Part shown: piece by piece, positions 7,128 through 50,783 of the stretch | Layout: each line of letters begins with the position of its first letter | Position numbering within the stretch: position 1 is the first letter of the stretch | IMG/VR virus record: IMGVR_UViG_3300043418_000072 | Location: 186,001-250,000 of that record | Length of the DNA: 64,000 bases | Reading direction: 5' to 3' (one strand) | Notes under the pieces: generated by a model | What the model was told of the DNA's origin: nothing | Seen by the model: the letters and a program-made list of their open reading frames with translations, nothing else | Database searches by the model: none | Program-made: the position numbers and the translations under genes

Positions 7128-7427
7128 ATGTTTAAAGCAATCAAAGAATTCTTTTTTGGCAAGCCAACTCCGGCACCAAAAATTGAGTCACACGTAGAGG
7201 CAGTAAATGCAGCACCGTACAAAGTTGAACCACCAGTTCTAACTGAAGTAGTTACACCTGCAAAAAAGCCTGCTGCTAAAGTAAAGCCAGTTGCACCTAA
7301 GAAACCAGTTGCTAAAGCGCCTGCAAAAAAGCCTGCTGCAATCAAAGCACCTGCTAAGAAAGCATTGGCTAAAGCTGGCGATCCAAAGCCTGCTAAGAAA
7401 CCAGCCAAGAAACCTGCTAGCAAGTAA
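7128..7427 (+). CDS. histone H1-like / PhaM-PhaF-like PAKK-repeat protein
   Basis: Repeated PAKKP/PAKKA; N-terminal amphipathic MFKAIKEFFFGK; AAGGAG RBS; TAAATA upstream. Confidence 0.7.
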   Translation: MFKAIKEFFFGKPTPAPKIESHVEAVNAAPYKVEPPVLTEVVTPAKKPAAKVKPVAPKKPVAKAPAKKPAAIKAPAKKALAKAGDPKPAKKPAKKPASK

Positions 7428-8518
7428 TGTTTCTCAACGTCGGAGTTTTCCGCGATAATTCCGACACGGTTAGGTACCACCTAGATCATTTTGAAAAGCT
7501 CACTCCAAACGAATGGGCAGTTTACGATGATCTAGGTCACTACTTAAACAGTGGGCATCCACTGAACATCGCGTTTATTCACCTACCCTATCCATTCAAA
7601 TCTGACACCCAAGCTAAACTAGATGCAGTCTACGAGATCAGCGATTTTGTTTTTGTTATAGGCTCTGAGCTACATGCTAGCACACTAGAGTTTATACTAA
7701 AGAACGATCGTCCCAACATTGCCTACTATCTTTGCGGGTTTGTTGAGCAACCACTGGAACATGCAACTGTTCATCAATACTTTGATTGGTTTGAAACCAG
7801 TCGCTATTTTTATCGTGATTACTTGCCCGAGCTGTTGGGAAGAATCAATTATGTTCACAGTAAGGAATCGCACTTTGATATCCTACTAGGTCGAAAGAAG
7901 CCTCACCGTGATGCTGTTTACCAATTTGTAAAAGCGAACCTAAGGCAAGAAAATCGTGTGCTCACTTACTTTAACGAGCACCAAGTAGATTTTGCCACGG
8001 GTAGTGAACAATGGATATGGGAGGATCGCGGTATGCAGTTTATCAATGATCCTAAATGGACTGTGGACTTTGTTAAGTACTACGGTCACGCGATGAGTAT
8101 TAGCCAAGTTATACCCATTGATATCTACAATCGCACTGCCTACACTGTAGTAGCAGAAACCAACTATGATAATAGATACAGTTTTTACACTGAGAAAACT
8201 GCCAAGCCTATTATTGCTAGGCGCTTGTTTATTATGTTTGGCGGCCAGCATTACCTACGCAATTTACGCAAGTTGGGATTTCAAACGTTTGGTTCTGTTA
8301 TAGATGAAAGCTACGACTCTATTGCCGATGACCAACAACGTTGGGCCGCAGCATGTGATCAGATGAGTTGGTTATGCAATCAAGACCAAAATGCCATACT
8401 TCAAAAGGCAAGGCCAATCGTTGAACATAACTTTAACATTATGATGTCAACTGATTGGCACTTGTCTCTTGTGCGCGGTCTAGAATCTAAGATTGAAGAG
8501 CTACTGTCGCGAACTTAA
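7427..8518 (+). CDS. phage glycosyltransferase-like protein (paralog family member 1)
   Basis: C-terminal VVAET...TEKTAKPIIARRLF...LRKLGFQTF...IDESYD, shared with 14138 and 49325. Confidence 0.55.
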   Translation: MFLNVGVFRDNSDTVRYHLDHFEKLTPNEWAVYDDLGHYLNSGHPLNIAFIHLPYPFKSDTQAKLDAVYEISDFVFVIGSELHASTLEFILKNDRPNIAYYLCGFVEQPLEHATVHQYFDWFETSRYFYRDYLPELLGRINYVHSKESHFDILLGRKKPHRDAVYQFVKANLRQENRVLTYFNEHQVDFATGSEQWIWEDRGMQFINDPKWTVDFVKYYGHAMSISQVIPIDIYNRTAYTVVAETNYDNRYSFYTEKTAKPIIARRLFIMFGGQHYLRNLRKLGFQTFGSVIDESYDSIADDQQRWAAACDQMSWLCNQDQNAILQKARPIVEHNFNIMMSTDWHLSLVRGLESKIEELLSRT

Positions 8519-9494
8519 TGCTAGCAAGGTTCTTGGCTTTGGATTCGCACATGATGTCAAAGTCTTTGCTAAACGTAGCAGCCCAGTCGTTAACTGCATT
8601 GTTCCAGTAGTAGTCACTGTGAGCACGAAGTTTTTGCTTTTTGTGACCGCTTACAAGCAACGCTGGGTGATCGGGCAAGGTGTTCGCACAGTGTCCAACG
8701 AGGACATCTTCGCGTGAAACACTGTAGTGACAAGTAGGGCGCACACCGCGCCAGCTATCAATAACTGCTTTAACACGATCGCTGCTCGCATCAATGTACT
8801 CGCCTTCTCGGATCCAGTTATGATGAATATCGAGCACAGTAGGTACAAGATCGTGTAGAGACAAACAATCGTCCAAACCATGTGTGTATTCCTCGTTCTC
8901 TAGTGTTAGACAGTTACGTGCCTCAGGCGATAAACGGCCATATACATCTCTAATGCCCTGCGGACCCTTGCGTCCACTAATGTGTACGTTGATTTTGAAG
9001 TCTTGAAATTTTTGTCCATAGCCCATCCAGCGGGTCATATCAGCATGGTATTCGAACTCAAGGATTGAGCGTTCAACAACATCTCCAGTATCACTTGCGA
9101 GAACGCAGAATTGACCTGGGTGAAAACTAAGACGCACGTTGCAGCAACGAGCAACAGCGCCAACCTGCGCAAAGTGTTTTTCGCAATAAGCCCTAACGTC
9201 AGGCTGGCGCCAAAAATAACTCCAAGAAGGCTCGGTATATACAGGAAGAAGGTCGCTGCTAAGGCGCACCATTCTGAGATGTTGTTCAAGGGTTCCTACT
9301 TTTTCTACCAGCTGCTTTGCTGATTCGATGTTGTGCTTCATGATATCCCAGAGACGTTCCTCTGCAATATGCTTGCTCTGTCTATTTAGCCACGACACTG
9401 TAGTGCCGCGTGTATTTAATTCCGGAACACTTTCAATGCCTTTAGGGGTAAGCTCACTGAACTTACAGGCAAACCCAATTCGTGGTGTAGTCAT
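8487..9494 (-). CDS. uvsE: UV damage endonuclease
   Basis: RIGFACK, RLSSD, RLSFHPGQF, LENEE, LDIHH, AHSDY, MCESKAK. Confidence 0.93.
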   Translation of the reverse strand: MTTPRIGFACKFSELTPKGIESVPELNTRGTTVSWLNRQSKHIAEERLWDIMKHNIESAKQLVEKVGTLEQHLRMVRLSSDLLPVYTEPSWSYFWRQPDVRAYCEKHFAQVGAVARCCNVRLSFHPGQFCVLASDTGDVVERSILEFEYHADMTRWMGYGQKFQDFKINVHISGRKGPQGIRDVYGRLSPEARNCLTLENEEYTHGLDDCLSLHDLVPTVLDIHHNWIREGEYIDASSDRVKAVIDSWRGVRPTCHYSVSREDVLVGHCANTLPDHPALLVSGHKKQKLRAHSDYYWNNAVNDWAATFSKDFDIMCESKAKNLASIKFATVALQS

Positions 9495-9520: not shown

Positions 9521-10738
9521 TCAGTCAACTATACCAAAATTTGCCCAATTTGCAGCACCTAAGCAAACCCAGCCCAATGGACCGCCTGCGCTAGGATTGG
9601 CATTAAACACAATATGCCCTTTGGTGCTAGAGAAGTTGGGAGGGGTGTCGCTTGCAGACATTTTTACGTTGCCCATACGCAGGTCATTGATTTGTGCTGA
9701 TCCATCTGTGTTAAGCACGATATTGCTGTGCTGGTTGCTGCCTAAAACAAGTGATTGATTTCTGGGTGTGCCAATGCGGCCCTGACCGTTGCGTTCTTTG
9801 CTAACAGTAATTTCAATATCTTCGTCCCATACTGCCAATGCTGCACTAGGTTCTAGAGTGTTAATACCGGTACGTTTGTTGCCAACATATAACGTGTCTG
9901 CAAGTTGAGTTTCGCCCGATACTTGCAATTCCTTTAGCATACCCAGCTTCTGTAAGTTACTTTCGGTAATGGTGTATCCAATGCGATTACCTTCGATTAC
10001 TACATTTTCATTTACAGTAATCTTGGATAAGTCTAGCCCGTCTGTTTTGATCTTGCTAAAAATAGTGTCGCTGAAACCTGCAAATAATTCACTATCCAGG
10101 CCTTGCTGCACTGCATTGGTAACTGAGCTAGCTAATTGTTTGTAGAACGCACTGTCCTCGTCTACCTTGCCTTTTACGTTGAGGTCGCCCTCAACAGTTA
10201 AATCCATTGTTACTAGATTGTTTTCAACAACTACCGCAGCATCAAGAATAGTAACAACACAATTAGTCGATTGGTCATCAATGCCGGTGGATGCAAAGTT
10301 TCTAATAATACCACCTGCAACTTGGTTACCCGAAATAGCCAAGTCTGACTGCTTGATACTTGCTGCACTAACACTGCCTTCTGGGAAGTCGAGGTTAAAG
10401 ATCTTGTCCTTAACTGCGGTTGCTAATGTTTGGTTAAATTGTCGGTTAACATCAAGGTCCTTGAGTTTCTTGTAAACAAGGTCTGCAATCTCTGCTTCAA
10501 GCTGCGCTTGGATGTTATTTACAACCGCGTTCACAGCCGAGTTAATACGTTTCTGCAACGCCTCGGTGTCAGTGGGGTCGAGTACTTGGTTTAATTTGTG
10601 TACAGCTAGATCGTAGTTGTACGTGTCTAGTCGAGCTCTAAGCTCATCTTTAACGAGGTCAGTAATTTGATTACCAACCTTTGTTTGTACGTCTTCTAAT
10701 ATGTTAGCTACTAACGAGTCGAATTTTGATAGTTCCAT
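9521..10738 (-). CDS. putative virion structural protein
   Basis: Coiled-coil N-terminus; beta-rich C-terminus ending GHIVFN..P..GGPLGWVC...W..FG, typical of fibre-like proteins. Confidence 0.55.
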   Translation of the reverse strand: MELSKFDSLVANILEDVQTKVGNQITDLVKDELRARLDTYNYDLAVHKLNQVLDPTDTEALQKRINSAVNAVVNNIQAQLEAEIADLVYKKLKDLDVNRQFNQTLATAVKDKIFNLDFPEGSVSAASIKQSDLAISGNQVAGGIIRNFASTGIDDQSTNCVVTILDAAVVVENNLVTMDLTVEGDLNVKGKVDEDSAFYKQLASSVTNAVQQGLDSELFAGFSDTIFSKIKTDGLDLSKITVNENVVIEGNRIGYTITESNLQKLGMLKELQVSGETQLADTLYVGNKRTGINTLEPSAALAVWDEDIEITVSKERNGQGRIGTPRNQSLVLGSNQHSNIVLNTDGSAQINDLRMGNVKMSASDTPPNFSSTKGHIVFNANPSAGGPLGWVCLGAANWANFGIVD

Positions 10739-11472
10739 TGATCTTCAAATCTTATGCTGATAACGTGTTCATAATTTTTCTTAATCAATGACTTATACAT
10801 GAGATTTTTATGCACAATGAAATCACCTGCACCTGCATCCATACTAAACTTAGCCAACTGTTTGAAGTACATAGTACGTCGATTAAACGGTCCGTAAGTG
10901 GTTAGTTCATGTGCTGGGTTCGAGATTTCATATACAGTAGTAGTCCATGCACTACGGTTTGCAAAGTCCCAGTCATGGAACTCATTGTAAATGCAGTTAG
11001 TCTTACCATTTCGAATCACAGCCGGGATACTGAACTCACGATCTTTAAAGTCTTGATTCTTATAATCACGTAAAGTACTTACCACAAATTCACTGGCTAG
11101 GTTACAAATCTGTTTAACAACATTTTGCTGATCCAACTCGTTGTCAGCAAACGTAAAGAATTCTTCCATTGCAACCACAACGTCAAACTTCTTACCAACA
11201 GTCTCAGATTCTGATATGTATGTGTATTCGATATTCTTGCTGTCCAGGTAATCCCTTGCAGCTTGGCTAATGCAAGTGACAGAAACGTCACCATTCTTGG
11301 CGGATAGCAATGCTGGATTGAACCCGACGAATAAAGTTGTAGATGGTACAAAGTTATGAAATCCATAGATGCCATCTAAGATCTCTTGCTTCTTAGTTAC
11401 AATCTCTTGCTCTTTGCTTGAGTGTTTAAGTGCTGAAAGTAGTGCATCTGAATATCTAGAAAAATCGGTCAT
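10711..11472 (-). CDS. SAM-methyltransferase-fold protein (degenerate)
   Basis: TLFVGF motif I-like and KFDVVVAM motif II-like. Confidence 0.45.
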   Translation of the reverse strand: MTDFSRYSDALLSALKHSSKEQEIVTKKQEILDGIYGFHNFVPSTTLFVGFNPALLSAKNGDVSVTCISQAARDYLDSKNIEYTYISESETVGKKFDVVVAMEEFFTFADNELDQQNVVKQICNLASEFVVSTLRDYKNQDFKDREFSIPAVIRNGKTNCIYNEFHDWDFANRSAWTTTVYEISNPAHELTTYGPFNRRTMYFKQLAKFSMDAGAGDFIVHKNLMYKSLIKKNYEHVISIRFEDQWNYQNSTR

Positions 11473-11494
11473 AGTTGTTCTTATTATTAAGTAT

Positions 11495-12412
11495 TTATAT
11501 CGAACGAACTAAATCGAGCGTTACACAGTGGAAGCCTCCGCCAAGAGTGCGGCTGTGTCGTAAAGTCAATGGGATGACTGTGAACTTTAATGCCTCCAAG
11601 GTTTTAATTAGCAGGTCTTGTGCAGCATCAACAATGACAGTAGTGGGATTGATACTCAGCATGTTTAGTGCAATCCACTTACTAGCATATGGATACTCGT
11701 GAAACTCTTGAGCTACTACATCGTTAACAAATATCAGTTCTTTGTCTTTTAACATCTTAGGCAGCGTGTCATTGGTTACTCTGCTACCGTTAACAATAAA
11801 GGTATTTTCATTTAATGCAACAATAGTTGAATCAATATGCACCCCGGCATAGAAGTTACATAGCTCAATTTCCACGTCAGGTACTTGCTTGCATAGCCAA
11901 TCATATGCGGCACGATTTCCGCTAGCAGACTCGAGAAATAACCATTTGTCTTTTGCGACACGCAATATATTGGCAGCATCTAGTACCATGCCCTTATCGC
12001 GTGGCATGTGGATAATGTGTTCTGCTTCGTCCAAGAAATCCATGTAGCATTGATATTCCATGTCCCTACATGGGTACATCATGGCTGTGTCAATTATAAT
12101 TCCGCCATGCACAATAAAACGGTCACGCGGGCAATAGTTGTAAAGGCCGTCATGCACTTGAAAGTTCATAGTATCCGGGCGCTCTACTTCTACGCCGTGT
12201 ACAGTAAGAATGGTACAAAGACGTTGCAGGTCGCGATTAGTTTCATCGATGATCCACTGCGGTACCGGTCCTGCTGGCAGAGGAGTCTCTTTCCACAAGG
12301 TGTTTTGTTCTTCTGCACGAAAGACTGGATCGTGTACTGGCCAGTTTGCATGTGTTGCATCGCCGACAATGATCCGCTTTAACGGATCATATTCATTCCA
12401 ACTTGATATCAT
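11495..12412 (-). CDS. amidinotransferase (glycine/inosamine-phosphate amidinotransferase family)
   Basis: SWNEYDPLK, YCPRD, DAAN, HIDST, GGGFHCVTLD (catalytic Asp/His/Cys). Confidence 0.92.
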   Translation of the reverse strand: MISSWNEYDPLKRIIVGDATHANWPVHDPVFRAEEQNTLWKETPLPAGPVPQWIIDETNRDLQRLCTILTVHGVEVERPDTMNFQVHDGLYNYCPRDRFIVHGGIIIDTAMMYPCRDMEYQCYMDFLDEAEHIIHMPRDKGMVLDAANILRVAKDKWLFLESASGNRAAYDWLCKQVPDVEIELCNFYAGVHIDSTIVALNENTFIVNGSRVTNDTLPKMLKDKELIFVNDVVAQEFHEYPYASKWIALNMLSINPTTVIVDAAQDLLIKTLEALKFTVIPLTLRHSRTLGGGFHCVTLDLVRSI

Positions 12413-12921
12413 ACCCAACCTGTTATTTGTAAAGTGTATCTGGCTTCAATGCCAATGTTTGCTGCGGCATGTGGGGTATCATAATCCCATTCTAGCACTG
12501 TTCCTGCATCCCAATGCACTAACCCCATGCCGTTAATCTCACTGTAGTGGCCGGGCTTCCAGTCCTCTAAGAACACTACTGCTCTACGGATACGTTGCTC
12601 CTGACCTTGCAAGCTGTGTAGTTTAACATACTTTGCATACAAGTCAGAGTGAGTTGGTAAGACTGTTCCGGTATCCATGCGGTAGTAGCTGGTACCAATG
12701 TCCTTCCATCCCATCTCTCGATATATCTCGATGAACTTATCATTCCAACTAGGCTGAGGACTGCGCATGTCGCACATAGCGCCAGTGAATGGTCCGGGGT
12801 ATCCTTGGTGTTGCCAGATACGCAAGCTCTCGGGATCATTGAACTCTTCAGTTACATAATCCAACAGCTTGTATTCAATGCCCCAAAACTTAGGGATCTT
12901 ATACTTTGCGTGTATTGCCAT
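12409..12921 (-). CDS. 2OG-Fe(II)/cupin oxygenase (Asp/Asn beta-hydroxylase-like)
   Basis: PTHSD (HxD), PHAAAN (distal His), RYTLQITG; start reassigned to MAIHAKY. Confidence 0.75.
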   Translation of the reverse strand: MAIHAKYKIPKFWGIEYKLLDYVTEEFNDPESLRIWQHQGYPGPFTGAMCDMRSPQPSWNDKFIEIYREMGWKDIGTSYYRMDTGTVLPTHSDLYAKYVKLHSLQGQEQRIRRAVVFLEDWKPGHYSEINGMGLVHWDAGTVLEWDYDTPHAAANIGIEARYTLQITGWV

Positions 12922-14137
12922 AGTGGATGACCTTAATGTCAGTGCGAGCAGTAGCGTATTGACGCCATGGATCAACTACAATACTACCTTCGTTAAGTTT
13001 GCAGTAGAGTTCCTGCTCATTCTTTTCGCCGGCATACCCGTATGTGATCTTTCTATTATGTGCAAGAAGCACCACACCCTTAACGGATTTAGGATTGAGT
13101 TCTTCTGTTAGCGGATCAACATATTGTGGGGTGATACCAAAATCTTGTTTTAGAAAATGCCCAACTAGCAAACTGTAGCTACCTTCTAAATATGCCACGT
13201 CCGGCTTATATGCCTTACCGTGAATGTAAACGGGCAGCAACGCATTATTAGCTTCATCGGCAATAAATTTAGCCAAGTTACGTGCTTGAATTTCTCGCGC
13301 ATTCATGATAGCGTCGAACAAGTCGTAACCTAGATCCAACTTCTCTGCCATGTATCGCAATGCAATGTTGTCACGTGGGTGGCAAGGTCCGGCATCACCC
13401 ATACCTGCTGTCATATATTTTGGCCCCATGATTCGCATACTAGATCTTGCTAGTGCATCAGTCACGACATCCACATTAATATTGCCTTGCTTGATAGCAA
13501 CGTCTTGGATCATGTTAGCCAATCCAATTTTAGCACTAATGAATGTGTTGTAAAACACCTTAATACATTCCGCTTCGTCCCATGTGCCAACTTCATAACG
13601 TGGATTGTTTTGCATCAACCCTTTGTAAAACTCAATTAGCTCTGCTGCATCGGTTGTAACATCACCGTCTTCGGTACCAATAATAACCATCTCGGGATTG
13701 ACCATATCCCACTCTACACTGCCCATAGCAATTAAGTAAGGGTTGTAAACAAAACGTGGATTGGTAATGTGTTGGCGTAATCGTCCGCGCACTGTCCCTG
13801 GTAGTACGGTGCTAATTAGCACAACCATTTGATTAGGTCTTGCCCAACAGTTAATCTGTTTAAGCACATGCTCAACTACATCGTAGTTAAAGTCTACGTT
13901 GGGCAAATGTGCAATTGGGCTAGCACCGCCATACTTGGCATCATGCGGTGTTTGTACTGCAACAAAAATAATGTCTTGACCAAGCACTGCATCTTTAAGT
14001 TGGTCCACAATTTTGATCTTGTCACTGGTTTTGGGGTAAATATCATAGCCGGTAACAGAATGCTTTTCGGCCATCACTTCGGCACACGCCATTCCTAACT
14101 TGCCAATTCCAATAAATCCAATTTTCTTGCCTAACAT
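12899..14137 (-). CDS. ugd: UDP-glucose/GDP-mannose dehydrogenase family
   Basis: GFIGIGKLG Rossmann motif, AVQTP, ISTVLPG, AECIKVFYN, GPCHPRD catalytic Cys, AYKP; AAGGA RBS before ATG 14137. Confidence 0.92.
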   Translation of the reverse strand: MLGKKIGFIGIGKLGMACAEVMAEKHSVTGYDIYPKTSDKIKIVDQLKDAVLGQDIIFVAVQTPHDAKYGGASPIAHLPNVDFNYDVVEHVLKQINCWARPNQMVVLISTVLPGTVRGRLRQHITNPRFVYNPYLIAMGSVEWDMVNPEMVIIGTEDGDVTTDAAELIEFYKGLMQNNPRYEVGTWDEAECIKVFYNTFISAKIGLANMIQDVAIKQGNINVDVVTDALARSSMRIMGPKYMTAGMGDAGPCHPRDNIALRYMAEKLDLGYDLFDAIMNAREIQARNLAKFIADEANNALLPVYIHGKAYKPDVAYLEGSYSLLVGHFLKQDFGITPQYVDPLTEELNPKSVKGVVLLAHNRKITYGYAGEKNEQELYCKLNEGSIVVDPWRQYATARTDIKVIHYGNTRKV

Positions 14138-15253
14138 ATGATTCCTTTTGATTTTTTCTATAATGTAATGAAAGATCACTTCTTTGATAAAACAGGGATC
14201 ATGTTAATTTATCCTCAATTTAATCAAGAGCGTATAACCTTTGTTTCTAAATTGCTAAACGATAATGCAAAGCCTGTTGTTATTTTTTATGACCAAGAAC
14301 CAATCGATGTTACTAAATTTTACGCCGAGGTATATAGACCTTATTCTCAATCTTTTAAGTCCCGTCAGGTCTTAGTAACTAGTGAGTATAGCACAGAGAG
14401 TGACAAATTGTGTAAGGATTATGAGTTGAAAGATGTCCAGTACTTCTATCACGCATTACTGTGCCATGAATGGTATCGATTGCATTGGTACGAAAACATA
14501 AATGTTAATACCGATTTTGACCGCGCATATATTACTTATAACAATTTAACATTAGACAAACGTTTGTATAGAGCAAACTTGATCATTGAGTTGCAAAAGA
14601 GAAATCTAACGTCCAATGGATACGTAAGTTACAACAATAGCAATTTTAGTGGGATAACTGCATCCACTAACACGTATGCAATGTTGCCAGTACAGCATAA
14701 ACTAAACATCCAATTGCACATGGATCTATTAGAAACCCAAATGATACTGGATACTCCTGCCCCAAGAGGAGAGTTGAGTGCCGCAGTTAATATAGGTGAT
14801 ATGCAAAAGGCATTTGTAAATCTAGTAACCGAAACAATCTTTTACGAGAACAAACAACATTTAACAGAAAAGATTTTCAAGCCCATTGTTGCAAAGATGC
14901 CATTCTTGTTGTTAGCAGGCGCCGGCTGCTTGTCGTACTTACGTAGCTACGGATTTAAAACCTTTGGAGAGTTTTGGGACGAAAGCTACGATGATATTAC
15001 AAACAGTGCTGATAGATTTAGTGCAGTGCTAGCCATACTCGAAGATCTATGCAATAAACCCCATGAAGAACTAGTGCAAATGAAGTTGGCAATGAGTGAA
15101 ATCCTAGAATACAATTTCAATCACTTTTACACAAACATGCGTCCCATTGTTGTTGACGAGTTTATAACCAAGCTAGGTGCGGCACTAACTGCAAATGGGG
15201 TAGATTATGATCCAGCTGACTTAGAGAACTTGAACTGTAGATTAACCTACTAA
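14138..15253 (+). CDS. phage glycosyltransferase-like protein (family member 2)
   Basis: LVTET...LTEKIFKPIVAKMPF...LRSYGFKTF...DESYD. Confidence 0.55.
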   Translation: MIPFDFFYNVMKDHFFDKTGIMLIYPQFNQERITFVSKLLNDNAKPVVIFYDQEPIDVTKFYAEVYRPYSQSFKSRQVLVTSEYSTESDKLCKDYELKDVQYFYHALLCHEWYRLHWYENINVNTDFDRAYITYNNLTLDKRLYRANLIIELQKRNLTSNGYVSYNNSNFSGITASTNTYAMLPVQHKLNIQLHMDLLETQMILDTPAPRGELSAAVNIGDMQKAFVNLVTETIFYENKQHLTEKIFKPIVAKMPFLLLAGAGCLSYLRSYGFKTFGEFWDESYDDITNSADRFSAVLAILEDLCNKPHEELVQMKLAMSEILEYNFNHFYTNMRPIVVDEFITKLGAALTANGVDYDPADLENLNCRLTY

Positions 15254-15260: not shown

Positions 15261-16418
15261 ATGAAAATTACAGACGTATTAGACGAAGCGGGTGCTGCCC
15301 CGATATATTATTTTGCCTACGGCATGTTAACAGATCCAGAATTGATGCCGGGTGCAGAATTTGTTGGACGTGCAGAGCTAAAGAATTTTGTCTTTGAGAT
15401 GTTTACCTATGCCAACGTATTCCCGTATCCTGGTGCCAGGGTAATCGGCAGCTTGTGGGCAATCGATAGACAGCTACTTGCTCAATTAGACCAAACTGAG
15501 GGATACCCAACCCTATACGATCGTAAAACGGTTCCGGTATTTGCCAATGGAGAGCGCCACGAAGCAGCGATTTACACAATGACTCCCGAGACTCGCGAGT
15601 ACATGCAAGGCACTGAACCAAACGATGCGTACATCGCTCGCATAGAGCGTGGGTATAACAATGCAGGAATTCCGTTACGTCAACTTGATGATGCACTAGA
15701 TGCCATTTACTCTGCACAGGATCTTGACGAGGGGTGGAAAGACTGGGCTGCTACAGGCGCCCTTGCTGCTGGAATGGCATTAGGTGGCGGAGCTGCTGAT
15801 GCTAAAGTTGCACCACATGCACAACCTAAAGCAACAGCCCAACACGTGGCTAAAGCTGCACACCCAGTTGCAGCTCAGTCCAAAACAGCACAACCAGAAA
15901 CCTACGGTGTTAGTATGAACACTGGTCCCGAACATACTCTACAACGTACTGCTCTTAGAGCCGGCATCAAAGGAGCAGAACTAGCACAATTCATGGCACA
16001 AACTCGCCACGAAAGTGCAGATTTTACACGTATGAAGGAGATTGGTGGAGCCAAGTACTTCCACAAGCGTTACGACCCCAAAGCCGCACCAGCTATGGCT
16101 AAGACCTTGGGCAATACACATGCAGGTGACGGAGTTAGGTATCACGGGCGCGGCTTTATTCAAATCACTGGACGAGACAACTATCGTATGGCCGGAAAAG
16201 CGTTGGGGTTGCCGTTAGAGCAAAAACCGGAGCTTGCTGCTAACCCAGAAATTGCTGCCAAGATTGCAGTGTGGTATTGGCAAACTCGCGTTAGACCTAA
16301 TGTACACAACTTCAATGACACTGCTACAGTCACTAAATATATTAACCCTGCGCTCAGAGGACTGCAAGATCGCTTGCACAACTTTAAAGAGTACACTGTA
16401 GCGATGAACATGCGATGA
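15261..16418 (+). CDS. gamma-glutamylcyclotransferase (AIG2-like) domain fused to a GH19 chitinase/lysozyme domain
   Basis: YYFAYG...LDQTEGYP..Y (GGCT); FMAQTRHES...YHGRGFIQITGRDNY...AVWYW...TKYIN (GH19). Confidence 0.88.
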   Translation: MKITDVLDEAGAAPIYYFAYGMLTDPELMPGAEFVGRAELKNFVFEMFTYANVFPYPGARVIGSLWAIDRQLLAQLDQTEGYPTLYDRKTVPVFANGERHEAAIYTMTPETREYMQGTEPNDAYIARIERGYNNAGIPLRQLDDALDAIYSAQDLDEGWKDWAATGALAAGMALGGGAADAKVAPHAQPKATAQHVAKAAHPVAAQSKTAQPETYGVSMNTGPEHTLQRTALRAGIKGAELAQFMAQTRHESADFTRMKEIGGAKYFHKRYDPKAAPAMAKTLGNTHAGDGVRYHGRGFIQITGRDNYRMAGKALGLPLEQKPELAANPEIAAKIAVWYWQTRVRPNVHNFNDTATVTKYINPALRGLQDRLHNFKEYTVAMNMR

Positions 16419-17437
16419 AAATAAACGAAATTTTAACAGAAGCCCTAGTAGGCGAACTCAACTTCGGTCCACTAAAGATTATGGTGGACCAACATACCAT
16501 TGACAGATCTATTCAACGCTATGTTTCACCGTTTGGTGTAGACCGTGTGCTAAAACAACTGCCTATTGTAATCGACGAATTGCGCGGGGTTGAACCCGGG
16601 CAACAAGTTTGGGTTTACGATCAGGCACAAAACATTGCGTTAGGTATGCGTAGACTGGGCACAGAGCAAAACCTGCGCTTCTTATTTAAAACTGTAGTTG
16701 GTGATCGCCCATACGACAGCGACATGCCTGTTATCTTATTGGGCGAGCCCCACGAAGAGCTAGACGAGCAAGTATTAGACGAATTAATCACTAGCGATCA
16801 CCGTGCTAAAATCCAGCAAACAATGAAGTCAGCGGGCTACACTGAGCTAGGTGCTGGCGCAGACGCTGCGGTATACGCAAAAGATGCTCATACAGTAATT
16901 AAAATCCTTATGCCAGACAGTGGGCAGTTAAGCACAGGCGAAAAGACATTCCTAGACTTCTATCAATATGTAACAACTAGCAAGCCAAATCCATTCTTGC
17001 CAAGATTTGTTAAGATTCAGGGGCAACATCATAATCGTTTTGAAATTGACGGCGAACCATTTAGGCAAATCGCTATGGAACGCTTGCAACCTATTCCGGC
17101 TGGTACCGCATTGCAGGGCATTGTTTGGATCATGAGTGAGTGTGCAGCCCGCCAACTTAGATGGGAGCAAGTGCTTGATGACTTTATGACCGAAAGTGAT
17201 CTATGGCGTTACTGGGGCGGTGACCCTGATGTCCCGGAACTAGTGCATAACGAGTTCATGGATCACCGTAAGCAAAGCTACTACGAAGCATTGTACATCA
17301 CTATGCTTATTCTAGCTAGACTGGGCGCACACAAAGGTTGGGGATGGGACTTGCATACAGAGAATGTTATGCAACGTGCAGATGGTACACCAGTTATCAT
17401 CGATCCGTGGTACCACGATGTACTAGGAACCGTTTAA
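16415..17437 (+). CDS. two-domain protein: N-terminal DUF4258/RelE-like domain plus protein-kinase-like domain
   Basis: Kinase: LGAGADAAVY, VIKI, AMERL, WDLHTENVM, IIDP. N-domain: HTIDRSIQRYVS. Confidence 0.75.
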   Translation: MKINEILTEALVGELNFGPLKIMVDQHTIDRSIQRYVSPFGVDRVLKQLPIVIDELRGVEPGQQVWVYDQAQNIALGMRRLGTEQNLRFLFKTVVGDRPYDSDMPVILLGEPHEELDEQVLDELITSDHRAKIQQTMKSAGYTELGAGADAAVYAKDAHTVIKILMPDSGQLSTGEKTFLDFYQYVTTSKPNPFLPRFVKIQGQHHNRFEIDGEPFRQIAMERLQPIPAGTALQGIVWIMSECAARQLRWEQVLDDFMTESDLWRYWGGDPDVPELVHNEFMDHRKQSYYEALYITMLILARLGAHKGWGWDLHTENVMQRADGTPVIIDPWYHDVLGTV

Positions 17438-18189
17438 TCCACTTGCTTGTAGATAAACTCGGCCTCGGGTATACGGGTTCTACCGTTTTTACTACCCAAT
17501 ACAACAACGCGGCGCAGGCCGCGTTCTGTTTCAACTGTTAAAATAATACATCCACCTGCTGCATTAGTGGTGCCAGTCTTGCTAACAATGAACTTGTGCT
17601 TGTGACCAATTAAGGGATTGGTTTGTTTAAAGATCAACCACCGCTTTTTGTTCTTAATCTCTACTCGAGTCTTGGCAGCAGAGTCCACAATAAGATAGTT
17701 CTTCTCTGCTACATTCAATAACAATAACAAATCTTCTGCGGTACTGGTGTTGTCTGGTAATAGTCCTGTCGCATCAACATAGTTAGTATGTCGCATACCA
17801 TACTTCATAGCGTTGGCATTCATGTCGCTGATGCAATTACCGTACCCGCCTATATAATTCCTGCATAGCAAATCTGCGGCATGGTTGTCGCTTTTGACCA
17901 TTGCAAGATTAATAAGCTCTTGCCTAGTTAGACGTAGAGTTTGGTTGTAGGCTATGGATTGATTTAGATCCTGTTTTGCTTCCATAACTGTTAGCACAGT
18001 CATTACCTTGGTAATGCTAGCCATTGGACGTATGGTGCCAGTGTCTTTACTGGCTAGGATTTGGTTTTGTTCGTCTGCGACAAGCCAGGACTTTGCAGTA
18101 AGGTCGCTAGTGTCGTCGATAGTTGTGGCAGGTTTCGCCCAGCTAATGCTGCTGGCAAGTAATGCCAAAATAAGTATAGTGCTACGCAT
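17434..18189 (-). CDS. D-alanyl-D-alanine carboxy/endopeptidase (peptidase S11, PBP7-like)
   Basis: Signal peptide; SITK (SxxK), SDN (SxN), KTG. Confidence 0.93.
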   Translation of the reverse strand: MRSTILILALLASSISWAKPATTIDDTSDLTAKSWLVADEQNQILASKDTGTIRPMASITKVMTVLTVMEAKQDLNQSIAYNQTLRLTRQELINLAMVKSDNHAADLLCRNYIGGYGNCISDMNANAMKYGMRHTNYVDATGLLPDNTSTAEDLLLLLNVAEKNYLIVDSAAKTRVEIKNKKRWLIFKQTNPLIGHKHKFIVSKTGTTNAAGGCIILTVETERGLRRVVVLGSKNGRTRIPEAEFIYKQVD

Positions 18190-40986: not shown

Positions 40987-42117
40987 TTAGAGACTGAAGC
41001 CGCTAAAAGTATTTGAGTCAACGTCTTGTTTTGTACCACCAACTACGTAAGATGAAATCTCAGTTTCTTGTGGCGCAACTTGTACGTCAGCACCAGCAAT
41101 CCACTTGGCAGTCCAAGGCAATGGGTTAGAGCTAGGCTTTGGAATACCGCAGTCTAGGCCGATAGCAGTCATGCGCTTGCAAGTCAACCAGTCCACGTAT
41201 TGGCACAATAGTTGAGTGTTAAGACCAATCATAGATCCGTCTTTAAACAAATACTCAGCCCAAGTCTTTTCTTGTTGTGCTGCACTCAAGAACATGCGAG
41301 TACATTCTTCTCGTGTCTCTTCTTTGATCTTGATAAAGTCGGGATCATCCTGTGGCAACAACTTCAACAAGGTCTGTGTTGAGCCAAGGTGTACGTTCTC
41401 GTCGCGGCAGATAAGTTTGATGTTCTTGGCATTGCCTTCCATCTTCTTTAGTTCTGCAAATGCCCATGAGCAAGCAAAGCTAACGTAGAAGCGAATGCCC
41501 TCTAGTGCGTTAACACTGTTGATAGCAAGCCACAGCTTCTTCTTTAGTTCGTACAGGTTGACTTCAAATTCGTTGCCGTTAATGGTGTGTACACCAGCGC
41601 CTAGCAAATTGTAGAACCCGCCGTACTCAATGAGATCATCGTAGTACTTGCTAATATCTTTAGCACAGTTAACAATAGGTTCAATGTCCATTAGGCCATC
41701 GAAGATCTCGCTAGGGTTGCTATAGATGTTGCGAATAATGTGAGTGTAACTACGACTGTGAACAGTCTCGTTAAATGCCCATGTGGTAATCCAAGTTTCC
41801 AATTCAGGAATAGATACCAATGGCAAGAACGCCAGCGTTGGGCTACGTCCTTGCACACTGTCTAATAAAATTTGTCGCTTTAGGTTACTGGTAAAGATAT
41901 GCTGTTCAAACTCTGTTAGTTCCTTGAAGTCTTTGCTATCGCGAACGATGTCAATTTCTTCAGGGCGCCAAAAGAATCCCAACTGCTTATCAGTTAGTTT
42001 GTCAAATTGTCTATACTTTAATGTTTCGTAACGTTGCACTGTCACTGGACCACTTGGGTCCAGGAACATGAGTGCTTCGGTATGCTTCTTTTTGTTGTTG
42101 ATATTAAAAACGCTCAT
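40987..42117 (-). CDS. nrdB: ribonucleotide reductase class Ia beta subunit
   Basis: FFWRPEE, LDSVQGR, ETVHSRSY, LEGIRFYVSF, RDENVH, VAPQETE. Confidence 0.97.
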   Translation of the reverse strand: MSVFNINNKKKHTEALMFLDPSGPVTVQRYETLKYRQFDKLTDKQLGFFWRPEEIDIVRDSKDFKELTEFEQHIFTSNLKRQILLDSVQGRSPTLAFLPLVSIPELETWITTWAFNETVHSRSYTHIIRNIYSNPSEIFDGLMDIEPIVNCAKDISKYYDDLIEYGGFYNLLGAGVHTINGNEFEVNLYELKKKLWLAINSVNALEGIRFYVSFACSWAFAELKKMEGNAKNIKLICRDENVHLGSTQTLLKLLPQDDPDFIKIKEETREECTRMFLSAAQQEKTWAEYLFKDGSMIGLNTQLLCQYVDWLTCKRMTAIGLDCGIPKPSSNPLPWTAKWIAGADVQVAPQETEISSYVVGGTKQDVDSNTFSGFSL

Positions 42118-42776: not shown

Positions 42777-42777
42777 A

Positions 42778-48597: not shown

Positions 48598-49347
48598 ATG
48601 AAATTACTTATAAGTGGGTGCAGCTTTACCCAATGGCCCGAGACACCGGGCGGACTCAATACGTGTTGGCCCCGTTACCTAAACGAAATCAATCCCGACC
48701 TAGACATTACCACTATTGCCGAAGCTGCGGCTGGCAATCAATATATCGCAGACAGCGTTATACACAAGGTCTTAGAGAATCCTGGTGCGTATGACCAAGT
48801 GTTGGTTATGTGGAGTGGTGTGAGCAGACTAGATTTCCTAACCGACGTTACTGATCCGGACTGGAATGCCTTATACGACAGCTACGGTTTCTATCGCAGA
48901 ATGGATAACCAAAAGCTGGGTTACATCTTTAGCGGTGGGCAGATGGGCACATGGTATAAGAATCCTGTTGCACATAAGATGTTCTATGAGCAGTACAAGG
49001 TATCTAGTGAATTGAGCTTGGCAATGATCAACTTAATGGAGATAGTTAAGCTGCAAAGCTTCTTGGAGAGCAAGGGCATCAAGTACAAGTTTATGAGTTA
49101 TGTAAACTACTGGACTGATGGTAAGAATATTAGCCCCAATGGCGACTTTGGTGTTACAGGATTCCCCGAAGTTCAGCATCTGTTACGTGAAATCAAGTTT
49201 GATAACTGGATCTTTACAAACGATGCCAAAGACGGGGTCTACGAATTAGCTAAGAGTATGGGAAGTTTTATGGATGACAAGTTTCATCCAGGCCCTGCTG
49301 CACATGCTGCGTGGGCCGGAATTGTTAACCAACGATTGTTGAGTTAA
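48598..49347 (+). CDS. SGNH hydrolase/acyltransferase-like protein
   Basis: GCSFT block I, AAGN block II, WSG..R.D, D.FHP block V. Confidence 0.7.
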   Translation: MKLLISGCSFTQWPETPGGLNTCWPRYLNEINPDLDITTIAEAAAGNQYIADSVIHKVLENPGAYDQVLVMWSGVSRLDFLTDVTDPDWNALYDSYGFYRRMDNQKLGYIFSGGQMGTWYKNPVAHKMFYEQYKVSSELSLAMINLMEIVKLQSFLESKGIKYKFMSYVNYWTDGKNISPNGDFGVTGFPEVQHLLREIKFDNWIFTNDAKDGVYELAKSMGSFMDDKFHPGPAAHAAWAGIVNQRLLS

Positions 49348-50410
49348 TTACTTGAGTGATACGGGATGCTGGCCATTCAGTCCAGTCCCGTGTCATTAAC
49401 AGTTGAAAGTTATGTTCAACAATAGGCTTGATCTTGGCATAGATAACATCTTGATCTTGCTCACAAAGCCACTTAACCTGCTCAAATGCGGCAGTATAAC
49501 GCTCGTTATCGTCTTTAATCAAGTCATAAGACTCGTCAATTACTCCATCAAATGTTTTGAAGCCCAATGCACGTAGATTGTGCATAAACTTGTAACCTGT
49601 AAAGGCAATAAACAGTCGACGACCAATCATTGGCTTGGCTGTCTTCTCGGTGAAGCAGCTTAGTGTGTTATCAAAGTCAGTTTCTGCAATGATACTGTAT
49701 GCTGTTTCGTTGAATGTCTTGATAGGAATGATCTGACTTAGGTGTACACGTTGCCCGCAATAGTCTGCCCAGTCGGCAGTGCCAATGGTTTGGCCAATTG
49801 GCGTTGTTCCTTCTTCCCAGATAAAATAATCCTTGGCATAGAATTCGCCTTCTTTCCAGTCGCCACCGTAAGTCATTACAACTTTGTCATTTAACTGGTT
49901 ATCGTTAACTGCCTTAAACACAAAGTCTCTATGTGGCTTGGGACTGCCTAGCAAGGCATCGAAGTACTTGGGCTTGGTAGCAGAGTAGTTGATGTGCATT
50001 ACTTTGTCGGGCAATGCTTTGTAAATGTTCGCAGTTGTTTTAAACCAGTCGCCCCAGCATAGGATGTGACTGTTAATGTCATCTCTGTCGTTTACTGCAC
50101 CGGGTAGCATCCAGTAGACATTGTCATGATGACATTGGTCCCAAATTTGCCAATGGAAGTTGTGCAATTCGCTTTCAAAGGTGAAAACTAAATCACTAAT
50201 GTAACTTAAACGGTTTATCTTATCTTCGAATCCAACGTAGGCTGTGTCAAAGTCACAGTGTAGTCGGTGTGTAGTAAATGCTATCTTAGTGTCAACTTGT
50301 GCTGCTTCATATTCGTCAATGCTGTGACAAATTGTGTATGGGCGGTTGAACTGTATTTTTGGAAGCCACTCTAAGTCAATAATCTGACTATCACTGTAAA
50401 CTAGAATCAT
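49325..50410 (-). CDS. phage glycosyltransferase-like protein (family member 3)
   Basis: FDALLG..KPHRD, SQIIP, IIAET...TEKTAKPMIGRRLF, GFKTF..VIDESYD; closest to 7427. Confidence 0.55.
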   Translation of the reverse strand: MILVYSDSQIIDLEWLPKIQFNRPYTICHSIDEYEAAQVDTKIAFTTHRLHCDFDTAYVGFEDKINRLSYISDLVFTFESELHNFHWQIWDQCHHDNVYWMLPGAVNDRDDINSHILCWGDWFKTTANIYKALPDKVMHINYSATKPKYFDALLGSPKPHRDFVFKAVNDNQLNDKVVMTYGGDWKEGEFYAKDYFIWEEGTTPIGQTIGTADWADYCGQRVHLSQIIPIKTFNETAYSIIAETDFDNTLSCFTEKTAKPMIGRRLFIAFTGYKFMHNLRALGFKTFDGVIDESYDLIKDDNERYTAAFEQVKWLCEQDQDVIYAKIKPIVEHNFQLLMTRDWTEWPASRITQVINSTIVG

Positions 50411-50783
50411 TCTTTGCTCGATAATTTTCAATTGCTGCTTTGATTGCATCCTCAGCTAAGATGCTACAATGGATTTTAACTGGTGGTAGAGCTAGCTCGC
50501 CTGCGATCTCACTGTTTGTGATGCTTGCTGCTTCGGACAGACTTTTTCCTTTAACCCACTCAGTAACCAATGAGCTGCTTGCAATAGCACTCCCGCAACC
50601 ATAAGTCTTAAAACGTGCATCGGTGATAATTCCATTCGAGTCTACCTTTATTTGTAATTTCATTACGTCGCCACAAGCGGGTGCGCCAACCATACCAGTG
50701 CCAACATCGCTGTCCTCACTCGCAAAAGAACCCACATTACGTGGGTTCTCATAGTGATCAATTACCTTGTCTGAATATGCCAT
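50391..50783 (-). CDS. iscU: Fe-S cluster scaffold IscU
   Basis: YSDKVIDHYENPRNVG, APACGDVM, FKTYGCGSA, LPPVKIHCS. Confidence 0.98.
   Translation of the reverse strand: MAYSDKVIDHYENPRNVGSFASEDSDVGTGMVGAPACGDVMKLQIKVDSNGIITDARFKTYGCGSAIASSSLVTEWVKGKSLSEAASITNSEIAGELALPPVKIHCSILAEDAIKAAIENYRAKNDSSLQ

What the first reader, a model, noticed from the sequence alone, without database searches (positions are those of the whole stretch)
10711..15253. Amidino-sugar-like modification cluster: UDP-sugar dehydrogenase, 2OG oxygenase, amidinotransferase, methyltransferase-like and GT-like genes
Seen: coupled minus-strand genes ugd, oxygenase and amidinotransferase (intact Asp/His/Cys), then a methyltransferase-fold gene and a fibre-like gene, with a GT-like gene divergent. 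Established: this amidinotransferase family transfers an amidino group from Arg to amines (glycine, inosamine phosphate). Inference: the cluster may make a guanidino/uronic sugar or modified amine used to decorate virion proteins, the host surface or DNA. I cannot name a characterised phage pathway of this composition.
Basis: partly seen in the sequence, partly recalled or inferred. Interest (0 to 1): 0.65.

Follow-up and report, generated by a model that had tools for sequence, protein, structure and literature searches.

The report
Phage guanidino-sugar tailoring gene module
A 354-kb uncultured jumbo phage carries a tightly conserved gene set (sugar dehydrogenase, a new small oxygenase family, a streptomycin-type amidinotransferase and a new glycosyltransferase family) that most likely builds a positively charged guanidino sugar for a glycan whose target is still unknown.

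Summary
On the minus strand, ugd (12899-14137), a 170-aa 2OG/Fe(II) oxygenase (12409-12921) and a StrB1/AGAT-type amidinotransferase (11495-12412) overlap at their ends. The amidinotransferase keeps Asp/His/Cys. A GT-B glycosyltransferase (14138-15253) starts head to head with ugd.

Across 80 related viral loci, oxygenase plus amidinotransferase occur in 80, ugd in 79 and the GT in 70. The methyltransferase-fold gene (16) and the "fibre" gene (26) are accessory.

In a second phage lineage of about 330 contigs, which includes Synechococcus phage S-SCSM2R, the same oxygenase and amidinotransferase sit beside a short DegT-type PLP enzyme among many glycosyltransferases. Natural fusions exist: oxygenase::GT-B and shortDegT::oxygenase. 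A third lineage has ugd, GT-B, shortDegT, amidinotransferase, oxygenase::GT-B and a carbamoyltransferase in one block. In this genome those parts lie at three loci.

Best reading (about 0.5): a sugar hydroxyl is oxidised, transaminated and then amidinated from arginine, as in streptidine synthesis, and GT-B enzymes place the sugars on an unknown acceptor.

No chemistry is shown. No characterised pathway of this make-up was found.

The parts
14138..15253 (+). gt_371: GT-B fold glycosyltransferase of an unannotated, virus-only family. Divergent from ugd; the start codons abut as CATATG.
   Evidence: AF2 pLDDT 83. All Foldseek and VIA matches shown, bar one Foldseek row, are glycosyltransferases or close GT-B kin: T4 BGT Z 11.0, alpha1,3-FucT Z 10.1, T4 AGT Z 9.9. 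R145, E232-T233 and T243-E244-K245 are invariant. Upstream of ugd in 70/80 loci. Fused to the oxygenase in other phages.
12899..14137 (-). ugd: divergent nucleotide-sugar 6-dehydrogenase (UDP-glucose/GDP-mannose dehydrogenase family).
   Evidence: Pfam N-terminal and central domains. PHROG 9148, E 2e-89. TIGR03026 scores 129.6 bits, below its 189.8 cut-off. Catalytic Cys motif aligned to 2o3j. Orthologues of 44-57% identity lie in glycan clusters of Synechococcus phage Bellamy and Pelagibacter phage HTVC008M.
12409..12921 (-). oxy: 170-aa 2OG/Fe(II) oxygenase of a new family with no Pfam model.
   Evidence: DSBH fold, Z up to 13.7 to PiuC, prolyl hydroxylases and PolD. HxD...H plus RxT invariant. 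899 cluster representatives in 1.84 billion proteins. Fusions to GT-B and to short DegT.
11495..12412 (-). amt: StrB1/AGAT-family L-arginine amidinotransferase. Its start shares ATGA with the oxy stop.
   Evidence: E 1.2e-49 to 1bwd. Catalytic Asp/His/Cys aligned and invariant. ATGA overlap.
10711..11472 (-). mt_253: class I methyltransferase-fold protein. Accessory; activity uncertain.
   Evidence: ESM Atlas structure neighbours are SAM methyltransferases, TM 0.72-0.79. Motif I reads VGFNP and the acidic residue after strand 2 is not conserved. Present in 16/80 loci.
9521..10738 (-). fib_405: protein of unknown function. Accessory.
   Evidence: No Pfam, PHROG, PDB or cultured-phage match. 938 metagenomic relatives, none with an informative name (a few carry JGI's 'DUF2164 family' label). 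Present in 26/80 loci.
7427..8518 (+). Second GT-B paralogue, flanking the cluster on the other side.
   Evidence: 33.6% identity to gt_371 over the conserved C-terminal core. Aligned in A2/A3 with the same invariant residues.
49325..50449 (-). Another GT-B paralogue in the window. The fourth in the genome is at G000:59161-60279. Convergent with an SGNH/DUF6071-like ORF at 48595-49347.
   Evidence: blastp within the genome. The same GT plus DUF6071-like pairing follows the oxy::GT fusion in L205.

Best explanation
The core is a four-gene module: a divergent GT-B gene, then ugd, oxy and amt. It works with genes elsewhere in the same genome: a short DegT-type PLP enzyme with a GalE-like epimerase at G000:92.2-93.8 kb, and a carbamoyltransferase, a GT-B paralogue, a full DegT and an SDR at 57-65.6 kb. 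Together they form a phage glycan-tailoring pathway.

Proposed chemistry:
1. The Ugd-like enzyme supplies a nucleotide uronic acid. The family is shown; the substrate is inferred.
2. The 2OG oxygenase oxidises a sugar carbinol carbon to a ketone (inferred).
3. The short DegT enzyme transaminates the ketone to an amine (inferred; its PLP motifs are intact).
4. The amidinotransferase moves the amidino group of L-arginine, through its Cys298 thio-intermediate, onto that amine. This gives a guanidino sugar and ornithine. The mechanism is established for the family; the acceptor is inferred.
5. GT-B family enzymes move the sugars onto a macromolecular acceptor, most likely a virion protein or a host envelope glycan (unknown).

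This is the dehydrogenase, DegT-aminotransferase, StrB1 logic of streptidine synthesis, applied in a phage. The MTase-fold and 'fibre' genes are lineage-specific add-ons.
For: - Family membership of ugd, oxy, amt and the GT.
- Translational coupling of ugd, oxy and amt.
- Synteny in the jumbo clade: oxy 80/80, ugd 79/80, GT-B 70/80.
- Among the 80 best-matching loci of at least 330 contigs of the S-SCSM2R type, amt sits with oxy in 71, short DegT in 74 and other GTs in 75.
- Fusions oxy::GT-B (7 representatives, one cut short), GT::oxy::GT and shortDegT::oxy. The DegT::oxy fusion is seen on two independent contigs.
- A third lineage has ugd, GT-B, B12-radical SAM, shortDegT, amt, oxy::GT-B and a carbamoyltransferase contiguous.
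- Short DegT is kept in 5/5 near-complete relatives. Its PLP Asp/Ser/Lys motifs are invariant.
- Where oxy is missing next to amt, an SDR sugar oxidoreductase is usually present: 51 oxy only, 8 SDR only, 4 both, 2 neither.
- amt is closest to StrB1, which amidinates a sugar-like aminocyclitol.
- In S-SCSM2R a second amt plus 2OG-oxygenase pair lies beside KdsA/KdsB.
Against: - No chemistry was measured. The acceptor of amt and the substrate of oxy are unknown.
- The best structural neighbours of oxy are protein prolyl hydroxylases and PiuC, not sugar oxidases, and Z values do not discriminate.
- 2OG oxygenases that turn a sugar alcohol into a ketone are rare. Host-made 4-keto sugars could feed DegT without oxy.
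- In this genome short DegT lies about 105 kb from amt.
- A GTP cyclohydrolase I inserted between oxy and amt in some loci has no place in the scheme.
- The oxy/SDR exclusivity rests on few independent lineages.
- The ugd is below NCBIfam's cut-off, and no Pfam C-terminal domain was found in it.
Confidence: 0.5

Rival explanations
1. Protein hydroxylation followed by O-glycosylation, as with collagen LH3 or Mimivirus L230, or Skp1 P4H/Gnt1. oxy hydroxylates Pro or Lys of a virion or host protein and the GT-B enzyme glycosylates the new hydroxyl. ugd, DegT and amt only tailor the donor sugar.
For: The top structural neighbours of oxy are prolyl hydroxylases (EF-Tu P4H Z 12.9, PHDs 12.3-12.5, viral collagen P4H 12.1, Mimivirus lysyl hydroxylase 11.0). 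Hydroxylase::GT fusions have LH3/L230 as their known precedent (from memory).
Against: The shortDegT::oxy fusion and the near-exclusive oxy/SDR pattern fit a carbonyl-forming role better. In the minimal cyanophage-type set (GTs, DegT, oxy, amt) oxy is the only recognised redox enzyme in 45 of 66 well-flanked loci. The only neighbouring candidate substrate (fib_405) is present in 26/80 loci. No collagen-like or Pro-rich repeat protein was seen next to the module.
Confidence: 0.2
2. DNA hypermodification. oxy makes a hydroxymethyl base in DNA (TET/JBP-like), the GT-B enzyme glycosylates it as T4 BGT/AGT do, and amt adds a cationic guanidinium group.
For: The best VIA match of gt_371 is T4 beta-glucosyltransferase (Z 11.0), with T4 AGT at 9.9. 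AlkB-family nucleic-acid oxygenases are among the oxy matches (Z 10-11.7). An oxygenase::GT fusion would suit a hydroxylate-then-glycosylate route. UvdE is syntenic in 69/80 loci. Bacillus phage SP-15, known for hypermodified DNA (from memory), also carries a ugd.
Against: BGT is tied within 1 Z unit with fucosyltransferases and other GT-B enzymes. There is no TET/JBP match in the top 50 for oxy. The only thymidylate-synthase homologue scores 358 bits and sits next to DHFR, so it looks like an ordinary ThyA. The cyanophage-type clusters hold GT2/GT25-type glycan transferases and lie near Kdo genes.
Confidence: 0.1
3. A diffusible aminoglycoside-like guanidino glycoside or other small metabolite made during infection. 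The S-SCSM2R authors label the genes 'antibiotic synthesis genes'. It could act, for example, to block competitors or superinfecting phages.
For: The enzyme set mirrors aminoglycoside tailoring: a StrB1-type amidinotransferase, a DegT aminotransferase, a NodU/TobZ-type carbamoyltransferase, a B12-radical SAM and GTs. The S-SCSM2R authors propose antibiotic synthesis (PMC12801897).
Against: No cyclitol-forming enzyme (inositol-phosphate or 2-deoxy-scyllo-inosose synthase), exporter or resistance gene was seen in any locus examined. Three to seven GTs per cluster in the cyanophage type and four GT-B paralogues here point to an oligo- or polysaccharide.
Confidence: 0.1
4. An auxiliary metabolic pair acting on free amino acids or polyamines, for example homoarginine or guanidine production, or amidinated polyamines as with HsvA, unrelated to the neighbouring sugar genes.
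For: Family members AGAT, HsvA and SxtG act on small amines. Amidinotransferase plus 2OG-oxygenase routes to guanidine are known in plants (from memory).
Against: Fusions tie oxy physically to a GT and to a DegT-type enzyme. Sugar genes co-occur in three lineages. amt is much closer to StrB1 (173 bits) than to AGAT (101) or HsvA (85).
Confidence: 0.07

Closest known systems
Streptidine branch of streptomycin biosynthesis (StrI dehydrogenase, StsC DegT-family aminotransferase, StrN kinase, StrB1 amidinotransferase)
   Same: amt is a clear StrB1 homologue (E 1.2e-49) with the same Asp/His/Cys. It is partnered with a DegT-family PLP enzyme and an oxidising enzyme. The chemical logic is the same: OH to C=O to NH2 to guanidino.
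   Different: The system is in phages. The oxidant is a small 2OG/Fe(II) oxygenase rather than an NAD dehydrogenase. The DegT partner is a roughly 200-aa minimal form. No kinase or cyclitol synthase is present. It is embedded in glycosyltransferase clusters, and the substrate is presumably a sugar, not an inosamine phosphate.
L-arginine:glycine amidinotransferase (AGAT/GATM) and bacterial relatives CyrA, SxtG, HsvA
   Same: Same fold and catalytic triad; E 5e-28 to 1.5e-20.
   Different: The phage protein is shorter (305 aa) and lacks about 30 residues between the two conserved halves. It is closer to StrB1. Its genomic partners are sugar enzymes.
Glycan ('LPS-like') gene clusters of marine T4-like phages (Synechococcus phages Bellamy and S-SCSM2R, Pelagibacter phage HTVC008M)
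   Same: Orthologous ugd at 44-57% identity. Carbamoyltransferase, methyltransferase and several GTs are present. S-SCSM2R has the homologous oxy-amt pair.
   Different: None of these clusters has been characterised. Bellamy and HTVC008M lack oxy, amt and the GT-B family. Here the GTs belong to a distinct unannotated GT-B family.
Bifunctional hydroxylase-glycosyltransferases (human LH3/PLOD3, Mimivirus L230)
   Same: A 2OG oxygenase domain and a GT domain in one polypeptide, as in the oxy::GT-B fusions. Mimivirus lysyl hydroxylase is a structural match (Z 11.0).
   Different: Different GT fold class and domain order. No collagen-like substrate is nearby. oxy is also fused to a PLP enzyme.
T4 beta- and alpha-glucosyltransferases (GT63/GT72) and GT10 alpha1,3-fucosyltransferases
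   Same: GT-B fold; best structural matches at Z 11.0, 9.9 and 10.1. An ExxxxxxxxxxTEK-type motif recalls the GT10 donor-binding motif (from memory). ESM Atlas's nearest named clusters are GT10, score 0.80.
   Different: No sequence-level match to any Pfam GT family or PDB chain. No hydroxymethyl-base pathway is evident.
Campylobacter phage CP220/CPt10 radical-SAM plus amidinotransferase cluster
   Same: A distant amt homologue (25% identity) next to two GT-A genes.
   Different: It has five radical SAM genes and a PAP2 phosphatase instead of oxy and ugd. The upstream 173-aa gene is not an oxy homologue. It is uncharacterised too.

Membership tests
Amidinotransferase (AGAT/StrB1 family, pentein fold) | Full-length sequence homology to characterised members | tested here: met
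   phmmer E 1.2e-49 to StrB1 1bwd over residues 3-305, and 5e-28 to AGAT. No Pfam hit at E 0.01.
Amidinotransferase (AGAT/StrB1 family, pentein fold) | Catalytic Cys-His-Asp triad | tested here: met
   Asp147/His194/Cys298 align to StrB1 Asp179/His227/Cys332. They are invariant in 9 sequences down to 36% identity.
Amidinotransferase (AGAT/StrB1 family, pentein fold) | Transfers the amidino group from L-arginine to an amine | not testable with these tools
   Needs an enzyme assay. The PRD motif Asp that binds the substrate in AGAT is invariant.
2OG/Fe(II)-dependent oxygenase | Double-stranded beta-helix fold | tested here: met
   AF2 pLDDT 90. All 50 best VIA matches are 2OG oxygenases, Z 10.2-13.7. 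Foldseek E down to 7e-6.
2OG/Fe(II)-dependent oxygenase | HxD/E...H iron triad and a basic residue for the 2OG C5 carboxylate | tested here: met
   H91, D93, H151, R161 and T163 are invariant in 17 sequences. Their position in the model's active site was not inspected.
2OG/Fe(II)-dependent oxygenase | Match to a curated family model | tested here: not met
   No Pfam, PHROG or NCBIfam hit. It is treated as a new family within the superfamily.
UDP-glucose/GDP-mannose dehydrogenase family | NAD-binding and central domains with the catalytic Cys | tested here: met
   PF03721 and PF00984. The Cys motif and the Lys/Asn of the central helix align to 2o3j.
UDP-glucose/GDP-mannose dehydrogenase family | Curated score cut-off and C-terminal nucleotide-sugar-binding domain | tested here: not met
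   TIGR03026 scores 129.6 bits against a cut-off of 189.8. PF03720 is not detected here and only weakly in the L205 orthologue. The substrate is therefore open.
GT-B glycosyltransferase | Two Rossmann-like domains (GT-B fold) | tested here: met
   AF2 pLDDT 83, pTM 0.86. All Foldseek and VIA matches bar one Foldseek row are GT-B enzymes or close kin, best Z 11.0.
GT10 fucosyltransferase | Match to PF00852 / conserved alpha1,3-FucT motif | tested here: inconclusive
   No Pfam hit for 29 members at E 1. No PDB sequence hit. ESM Atlas 0.80 is a lead only. Four GT10 structures lie at Z 8.6-10.1. The motif likeness rests on memory.
Class I SAM-dependent methyltransferase (mt_253) | Rossmann-like methyltransferase fold | tested here: met
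   ESM Atlas structure neighbours TM 0.72-0.79, all methyltransferases.
Class I SAM-dependent methyltransferase (mt_253) | Glycine-rich SAM-binding motif I and acidic residue after strand 2 | tested here: not met
   Motif I reads VGF(N/S)P. The post-strand-2 position is Q/T/E/D.
Phage tail or head fibre (fib_405) | Homology or fold shared with known fibre proteins | tested here: inconclusive
   No hits in Pfam, PHROGs, PDB or cultured phages.
DegT/DnrJ/EryC1/StrS aminotransferase (short DegT, G000:92249-92875, outside the window) | PLP-binding Asp, Ser and Schiff-base Lys | tested here: met
   PF01041 E 6e-14 in two stretches. D97, S116 and K121 are invariant. The Lys aligns to the DegT Schiff-base Lys motif in 9bgp/8vr3. 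It is only 208 aa against about 370 for the family, so activity is unproven.

The most novel reading that the evidence does not exclude
Large aquatic phages carry a three-enzyme cassette that turns a sugar hydroxyl into a guanidinium group: a new small 2OG oxygenase family, then a minimal DegT-type PLP enzyme, then a StrB1-type amidinotransferase. The sugar is installed by a new virus-only GT-B family. The result would be a cationic guanidino-glycan on a virion, host envelope or DNA. To my knowledge such a sugar modification is not described in any glycoconjugate outside aminocyclitol antibiotics.
Probability: 0.35. Interest if true: 0.8.

Novelty: new variant of a known kind. Interest (0 to 1): 0.62.

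Why it matters
If the product is a guanidino sugar, this would be a new kind of glycan chemistry. It would be made by thousands of environmental phage genomes:
- the oxygenase family has at least 2,891 clusters at 90% identity;
- the GT-B family has at least 4,573.

A permanent positive charge on a virion or host-surface glycan could change adsorption, superinfection exclusion, or resistance to depolymerases and defence systems.

The work would also give functions to three abundant 'hypothetical' phage protein families. It would give enzymologists a compact route from hydroxyl to guanidine on sugars.

S-SCSM2R is cultured and carries the homologous oxy-amt pair, so the question can be tested directly.

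Tried and rejected
- An apparent 674-aa mt::fib fusion in L011-L014 was an artefact of my ORF script. A stop codon separates the two genes.
- Megablast of the region against cultured phages found nothing.
- Pfam scans of 29 GT-B family members found no GT family. A profile of the family against PDB sequences gave only chance hits.
- CP220 gp085, the gene upstream of the Campylobacter phage amidinotransferase, is not an oxy homologue (hhalign probability 0.7%).
- The small radical SAM of S-SCSM2R gave no informative PDB match (best 7wzv, E 6e-7). The idea that radical SAM enzymes stand in for oxy as sugar dehydrogenases is left as speculation.
- The SDR next to short DegT is a GalE-type 4-epimerase (E 6e-67). 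It is not a UDP-GlcA decarboxylase, so an Ara4N-like route (Ugd, ArnA, ArnB) is not supported.
- Complex prediction on gt_371 plus oxy gave no verdict (score 0.00). This is evidence neither for nor against binding.
No expression or read-level data were obtained and read laying was not used.
- A scan of bacterial and archaeal genomes with the oxy profile found only phage-like contigs in MAGs of unrelated taxa and one 3.7-kb Synechococcus lacustris contig. No cellular home of the module and no host assignment came out of it.
- Literature searches for amidinotransferase with phage, glycosyltransferase or polysaccharide, and for guanidino or amidino sugars, found no characterised pathway.

Full report
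**Where this is.** The window is bases 186,001-250,000 of a 354,098-bp IMG/VR virus record rated complete, with 43.5% G+C. Its DnaB-type helicase is nearest (45% identity) to Pseudomonas jumbo phage PA5oct and Agrobacterium phage Atu_ph07. It is therefore an uncultured jumbo phage. The host is unknown. Relatives are abundant in JGI, ENA, Logan and Tara assemblies.

- ugd (12899-14179; the ATG at 14137 matches its relatives' starts)
  - It carries the NAD-binding and central domains of the UDP-glucose/GDP-mannose dehydrogenase family.
  - It matches PHROG 9148 at 2e-89.
  - Its catalytic Cys motif aligns to solved Ugd structures.
  - It is divergent: TIGR03026 scores 129.6 bits, below the 189.8 cut-off, and no Pfam C-terminal domain was found.
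- The 'oxygenase'
  - It has no Pfam, PHROG or NCBIfam match.
  - Homologues show that the gene starts at the ATG at 12921 and encodes 170 aa.
  - An AF2 model built on 17 sequences has pLDDT 90.
  - All 50 best VIA matches and most Foldseek matches are 2OG/Fe(II) oxygenases: PiuC at Z 13.7, prolyl hydroxylases at 12-13 and PolD at 12.2. A few Foldseek rows are other cupins.
  - H91-x-D93, H151 and R161-x-T163 are invariant.
- The amidinotransferase
  - It matches StrB1 at 1.2e-49 and AGAT at 5e-28.
  - Asp147, His194 and Cys298 sit on the catalytic triad.
  - These residues are invariant down to 36% identity.
- Coupling
  - ugd and oxy overlap by 23 nt.
  - The oxy stop and the amt start share ATGA.
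- mt_253 has a class I methyltransferase fold by ESM Atlas structure neighbours (TM up to 0.79), but its SAM motif I is degenerate.
- gt_371 folds as a GT-B glycosyltransferase with pLDDT 83. Its best matches are T4 BGT (Z 11.0), alpha1,3-fucosyltransferase (10.1) and T4 AGT (9.9).
- Nothing supports or refutes 'fibre' for 9521-10738.

- *Jumbo clade.* I fetched the 80 best of at least 587 matching contigs from IMG/VR, with amt identity of 60-80%.
  - oxy lies next to amt in 80/80, ugd in 79/80 and the divergent GT-B in 70/80.
  - UvdE follows in 69/80.
  - fib is present in 26 and mt in 16.
  - The core is therefore the divergent GT-B gene plus ugd-oxy-amt. The methyltransferase-fold and 'fibre' genes are accessory.
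- *Second lineage.* At least 330 contigs of up to 249 kb, including the cultured Synechococcus phage S-SCSM2R, have the same oxy (28% identity, E 2e-23) and amt (35%).
  - Among the 80 best-matching loci, a roughly 200-aa DegT-family protein is present in 74 and other glycosyltransferases in 75.
  - A carbamoyltransferase is present in 27, a small radical SAM in 24 and ugd in 11.
- *Third lineage.* It was reached through an oxy::GT fusion. It has one contiguous block: ugd, GT-B, a B12-radical SAM, short DegT, amt, oxy::GT-B, an SGNH/DUF6071-like protein and a carbamoyltransferase.
- *This genome.* The same parts are scattered.
  - Short DegT lies with a GalE-type epimerase and a GTP cyclohydrolase I at 91.5-93.8 kb.
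  - A carbamoyltransferase, a GT-B paralogue, a full DegT and an SDR lie at 57-65.6 kb.
  - Short DegT is retained in 5/5 near-complete relatives.

**Fusions.** A profile search of oxy against 1.84 billion cluster representatives gave 899 hits. Among the best 150:

- seven are oxy::GT-B proteins (six of 543-595 aa and one 522-aa form cut short);
- one is GT-B::oxy::GT-B (1,018 aa);
- one is shortDegT::oxy (397 aa).

The shortDegT::oxy fusion was confirmed on two independent contigs, followed by an SDR and a GT-B fragment. These fusions tie oxy to a glycosyltransferase and to a PLP enzyme of the sugar-aminotransferase family. Short DegT keeps the PLP Asp, Ser and Schiff-base Lys.

**Mechanism proposed.**

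- *Shown:* family and fold membership, intact catalytic residues, coupling, synteny and fusions.
- *Established for the families (my knowledge):*
  - Ugd oxidises C6 of a nucleotide hexose to the uronic acid.
  - DegT enzymes transaminate keto sugars. StsC of the same family makes scyllo-inosamine.
  - StrB1/AGAT enzymes carry the amidino group of arginine on the active-site Cys to a primary amine.
- *Inferred:*
  - oxy forms the carbonyl, short DegT the amine and amt the guanidine, on a sugar handled by the GT-B enzymes.
  - In 45 of 66 well-flanked loci of the non-jumbo lineages, oxy is the only recognised redox enzyme beside DegT and amt.
  - Where oxy is absent, an SDR is usually present: 51 oxy only, 8 SDR only, 4 both, 2 neither. 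This rests on few independent lineages.
- *Acceptor:* open.
  - GT2/GT25-type partners, carbamoyltransferases and a second amt plus 2OG-oxygenase pair beside KdsA/KdsB in S-SCSM2R favour a glycan on a protein or an envelope.
  - The proteins of that second pair's locus were reported in a purified-virion proteome (PMC12801897).
  - The authors suggest they may be carried along or simply abundant.

**Rivals.**

- *Protein hydroxylation plus O-glycosylation (LH3/L230-like).* This fits oxy's structural neighbours and the oxy::GT fusions, but not the DegT::oxy fusion.
- *DNA hypermodification.* This fits the BGT/AGT likeness. But BGT is tied with other GT-B enzymes. The single ThyA homologue looks ordinary and sits beside DHFR. 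No TET/JBP match appears.
- *A diffusible aminoglycoside-like product.* This is the 'antibiotic synthesis' reading of the S-SCSM2R authors. No cyclitol synthase, exporter or resistance gene was seen.
- *A free amino-acid or polyamine role.* This ignores the fusions and the sugar context.

**Comparison with the known.**

- amt is a member of the StrB1/AGAT family.
- oxy is a new family within the 2OG oxygenase superfamily.
- gt_371 is a new GT-B family, possibly GT10-like. That link is structural and by motif only.
- ugd is a divergent family member. Its orthologues lie in the uncharacterised glycan clusters of Bellamy and HTVC008M.
- No paper in the searched library describes this combination or a guanidino sugar in a glycan.

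**Unexplained.**

- GTP cyclohydrolase I lies between oxy and amt in some loci.
- The ugd and gt_371 start codons abut with no intergenic space.
- It is not known whether mt_253 binds SAM.

**Limits.**

- The complex prediction gave no verdict.

**Verdict.** This is a widespread, coherent and uncharacterised phage sugar-tailoring module. Its guanidino-sugar product is a well-motivated but untested inference.

Noticed in passing
window 14135-14140: The ATG of ugd (minus strand) and the ATG of gt_371 (plus strand) abut as CATATG. Divergent promoters would have to lie inside the coding sequences. The consensus promoter scan was no richer than shuffled sequence.
   Followed up: partly
window 15261-16418 (+): Endolysin-like fusion of a gamma-glutamyl cyclotransferase (AIG2/GGACT) domain with a GH19 chitinase-type domain.
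   Followed up: no
window 17434-18189 (-): S11 D-alanyl-D-alanine carboxypeptidase homologue (E 2e-30), often syntenic with the module.
   Followed up: no
window 8487-9494 (-): UvdE UV-damage endonuclease directly downstream of the module. Kept in 69/80 related loci.
   Followed up: partly
window 48595-50449: A GT-B paralogue (49325-50449, -) is convergent with a weak DUF6071/SGNH-like ORF (48595-49347, +). The same pairing follows the oxy::GT fusion in L205. The two DUF6071-like proteins are 24% identical, E 5e-5.
   Followed up: partly
window 45532-47804 (-): Tailspike-like protein with an Mtd_N domain and a pectate-lyase domain (45532-47103). Beside it is a GIY-YIG endonuclease-like gene (47124-47804). 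Both lie just past the class Ia ribonucleotide reductase genes at 40987-45078.
   Followed up: no
L018 8495-10727; L195/L196; G000:91546-92875: GTP cyclohydrolase I travels with short DegT. In some phages it lies between oxy and amt. Its role with these genes is unexplained.
   Followed up: partly
L205 4154-6415: A 753-aa B12-binding radical SAM protein lies inside the contiguous ugd/GT/DegT/amt/oxy::GT cluster of a third phage lineage.
   Followed up: no
L230 4354-7337 (S-SCSM2R ORF266-269): A second, more distant amidinotransferase lies next to two 2OG oxygenases and KdsA/KdsB. ORF266 and ORF269 were reported in the virion proteome (PMC12801897).
   Followed up: partly
L016-L021 (genome contigs): Phage-like contigs carrying the module are binned into MAGs of unrelated taxa (Haliscomenobacter, Legionella, Legionellales, Pacearchaeota, Terrimicrobiaceae). 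This is probably mis-binning, so they give no host clue.
   Followed up: no
G000:68569-69261 (outside the window): A Bax1-inhibitor (BI-1/YccA) family membrane protein is encoded by the phage (E 5e-53).
   Followed up: no
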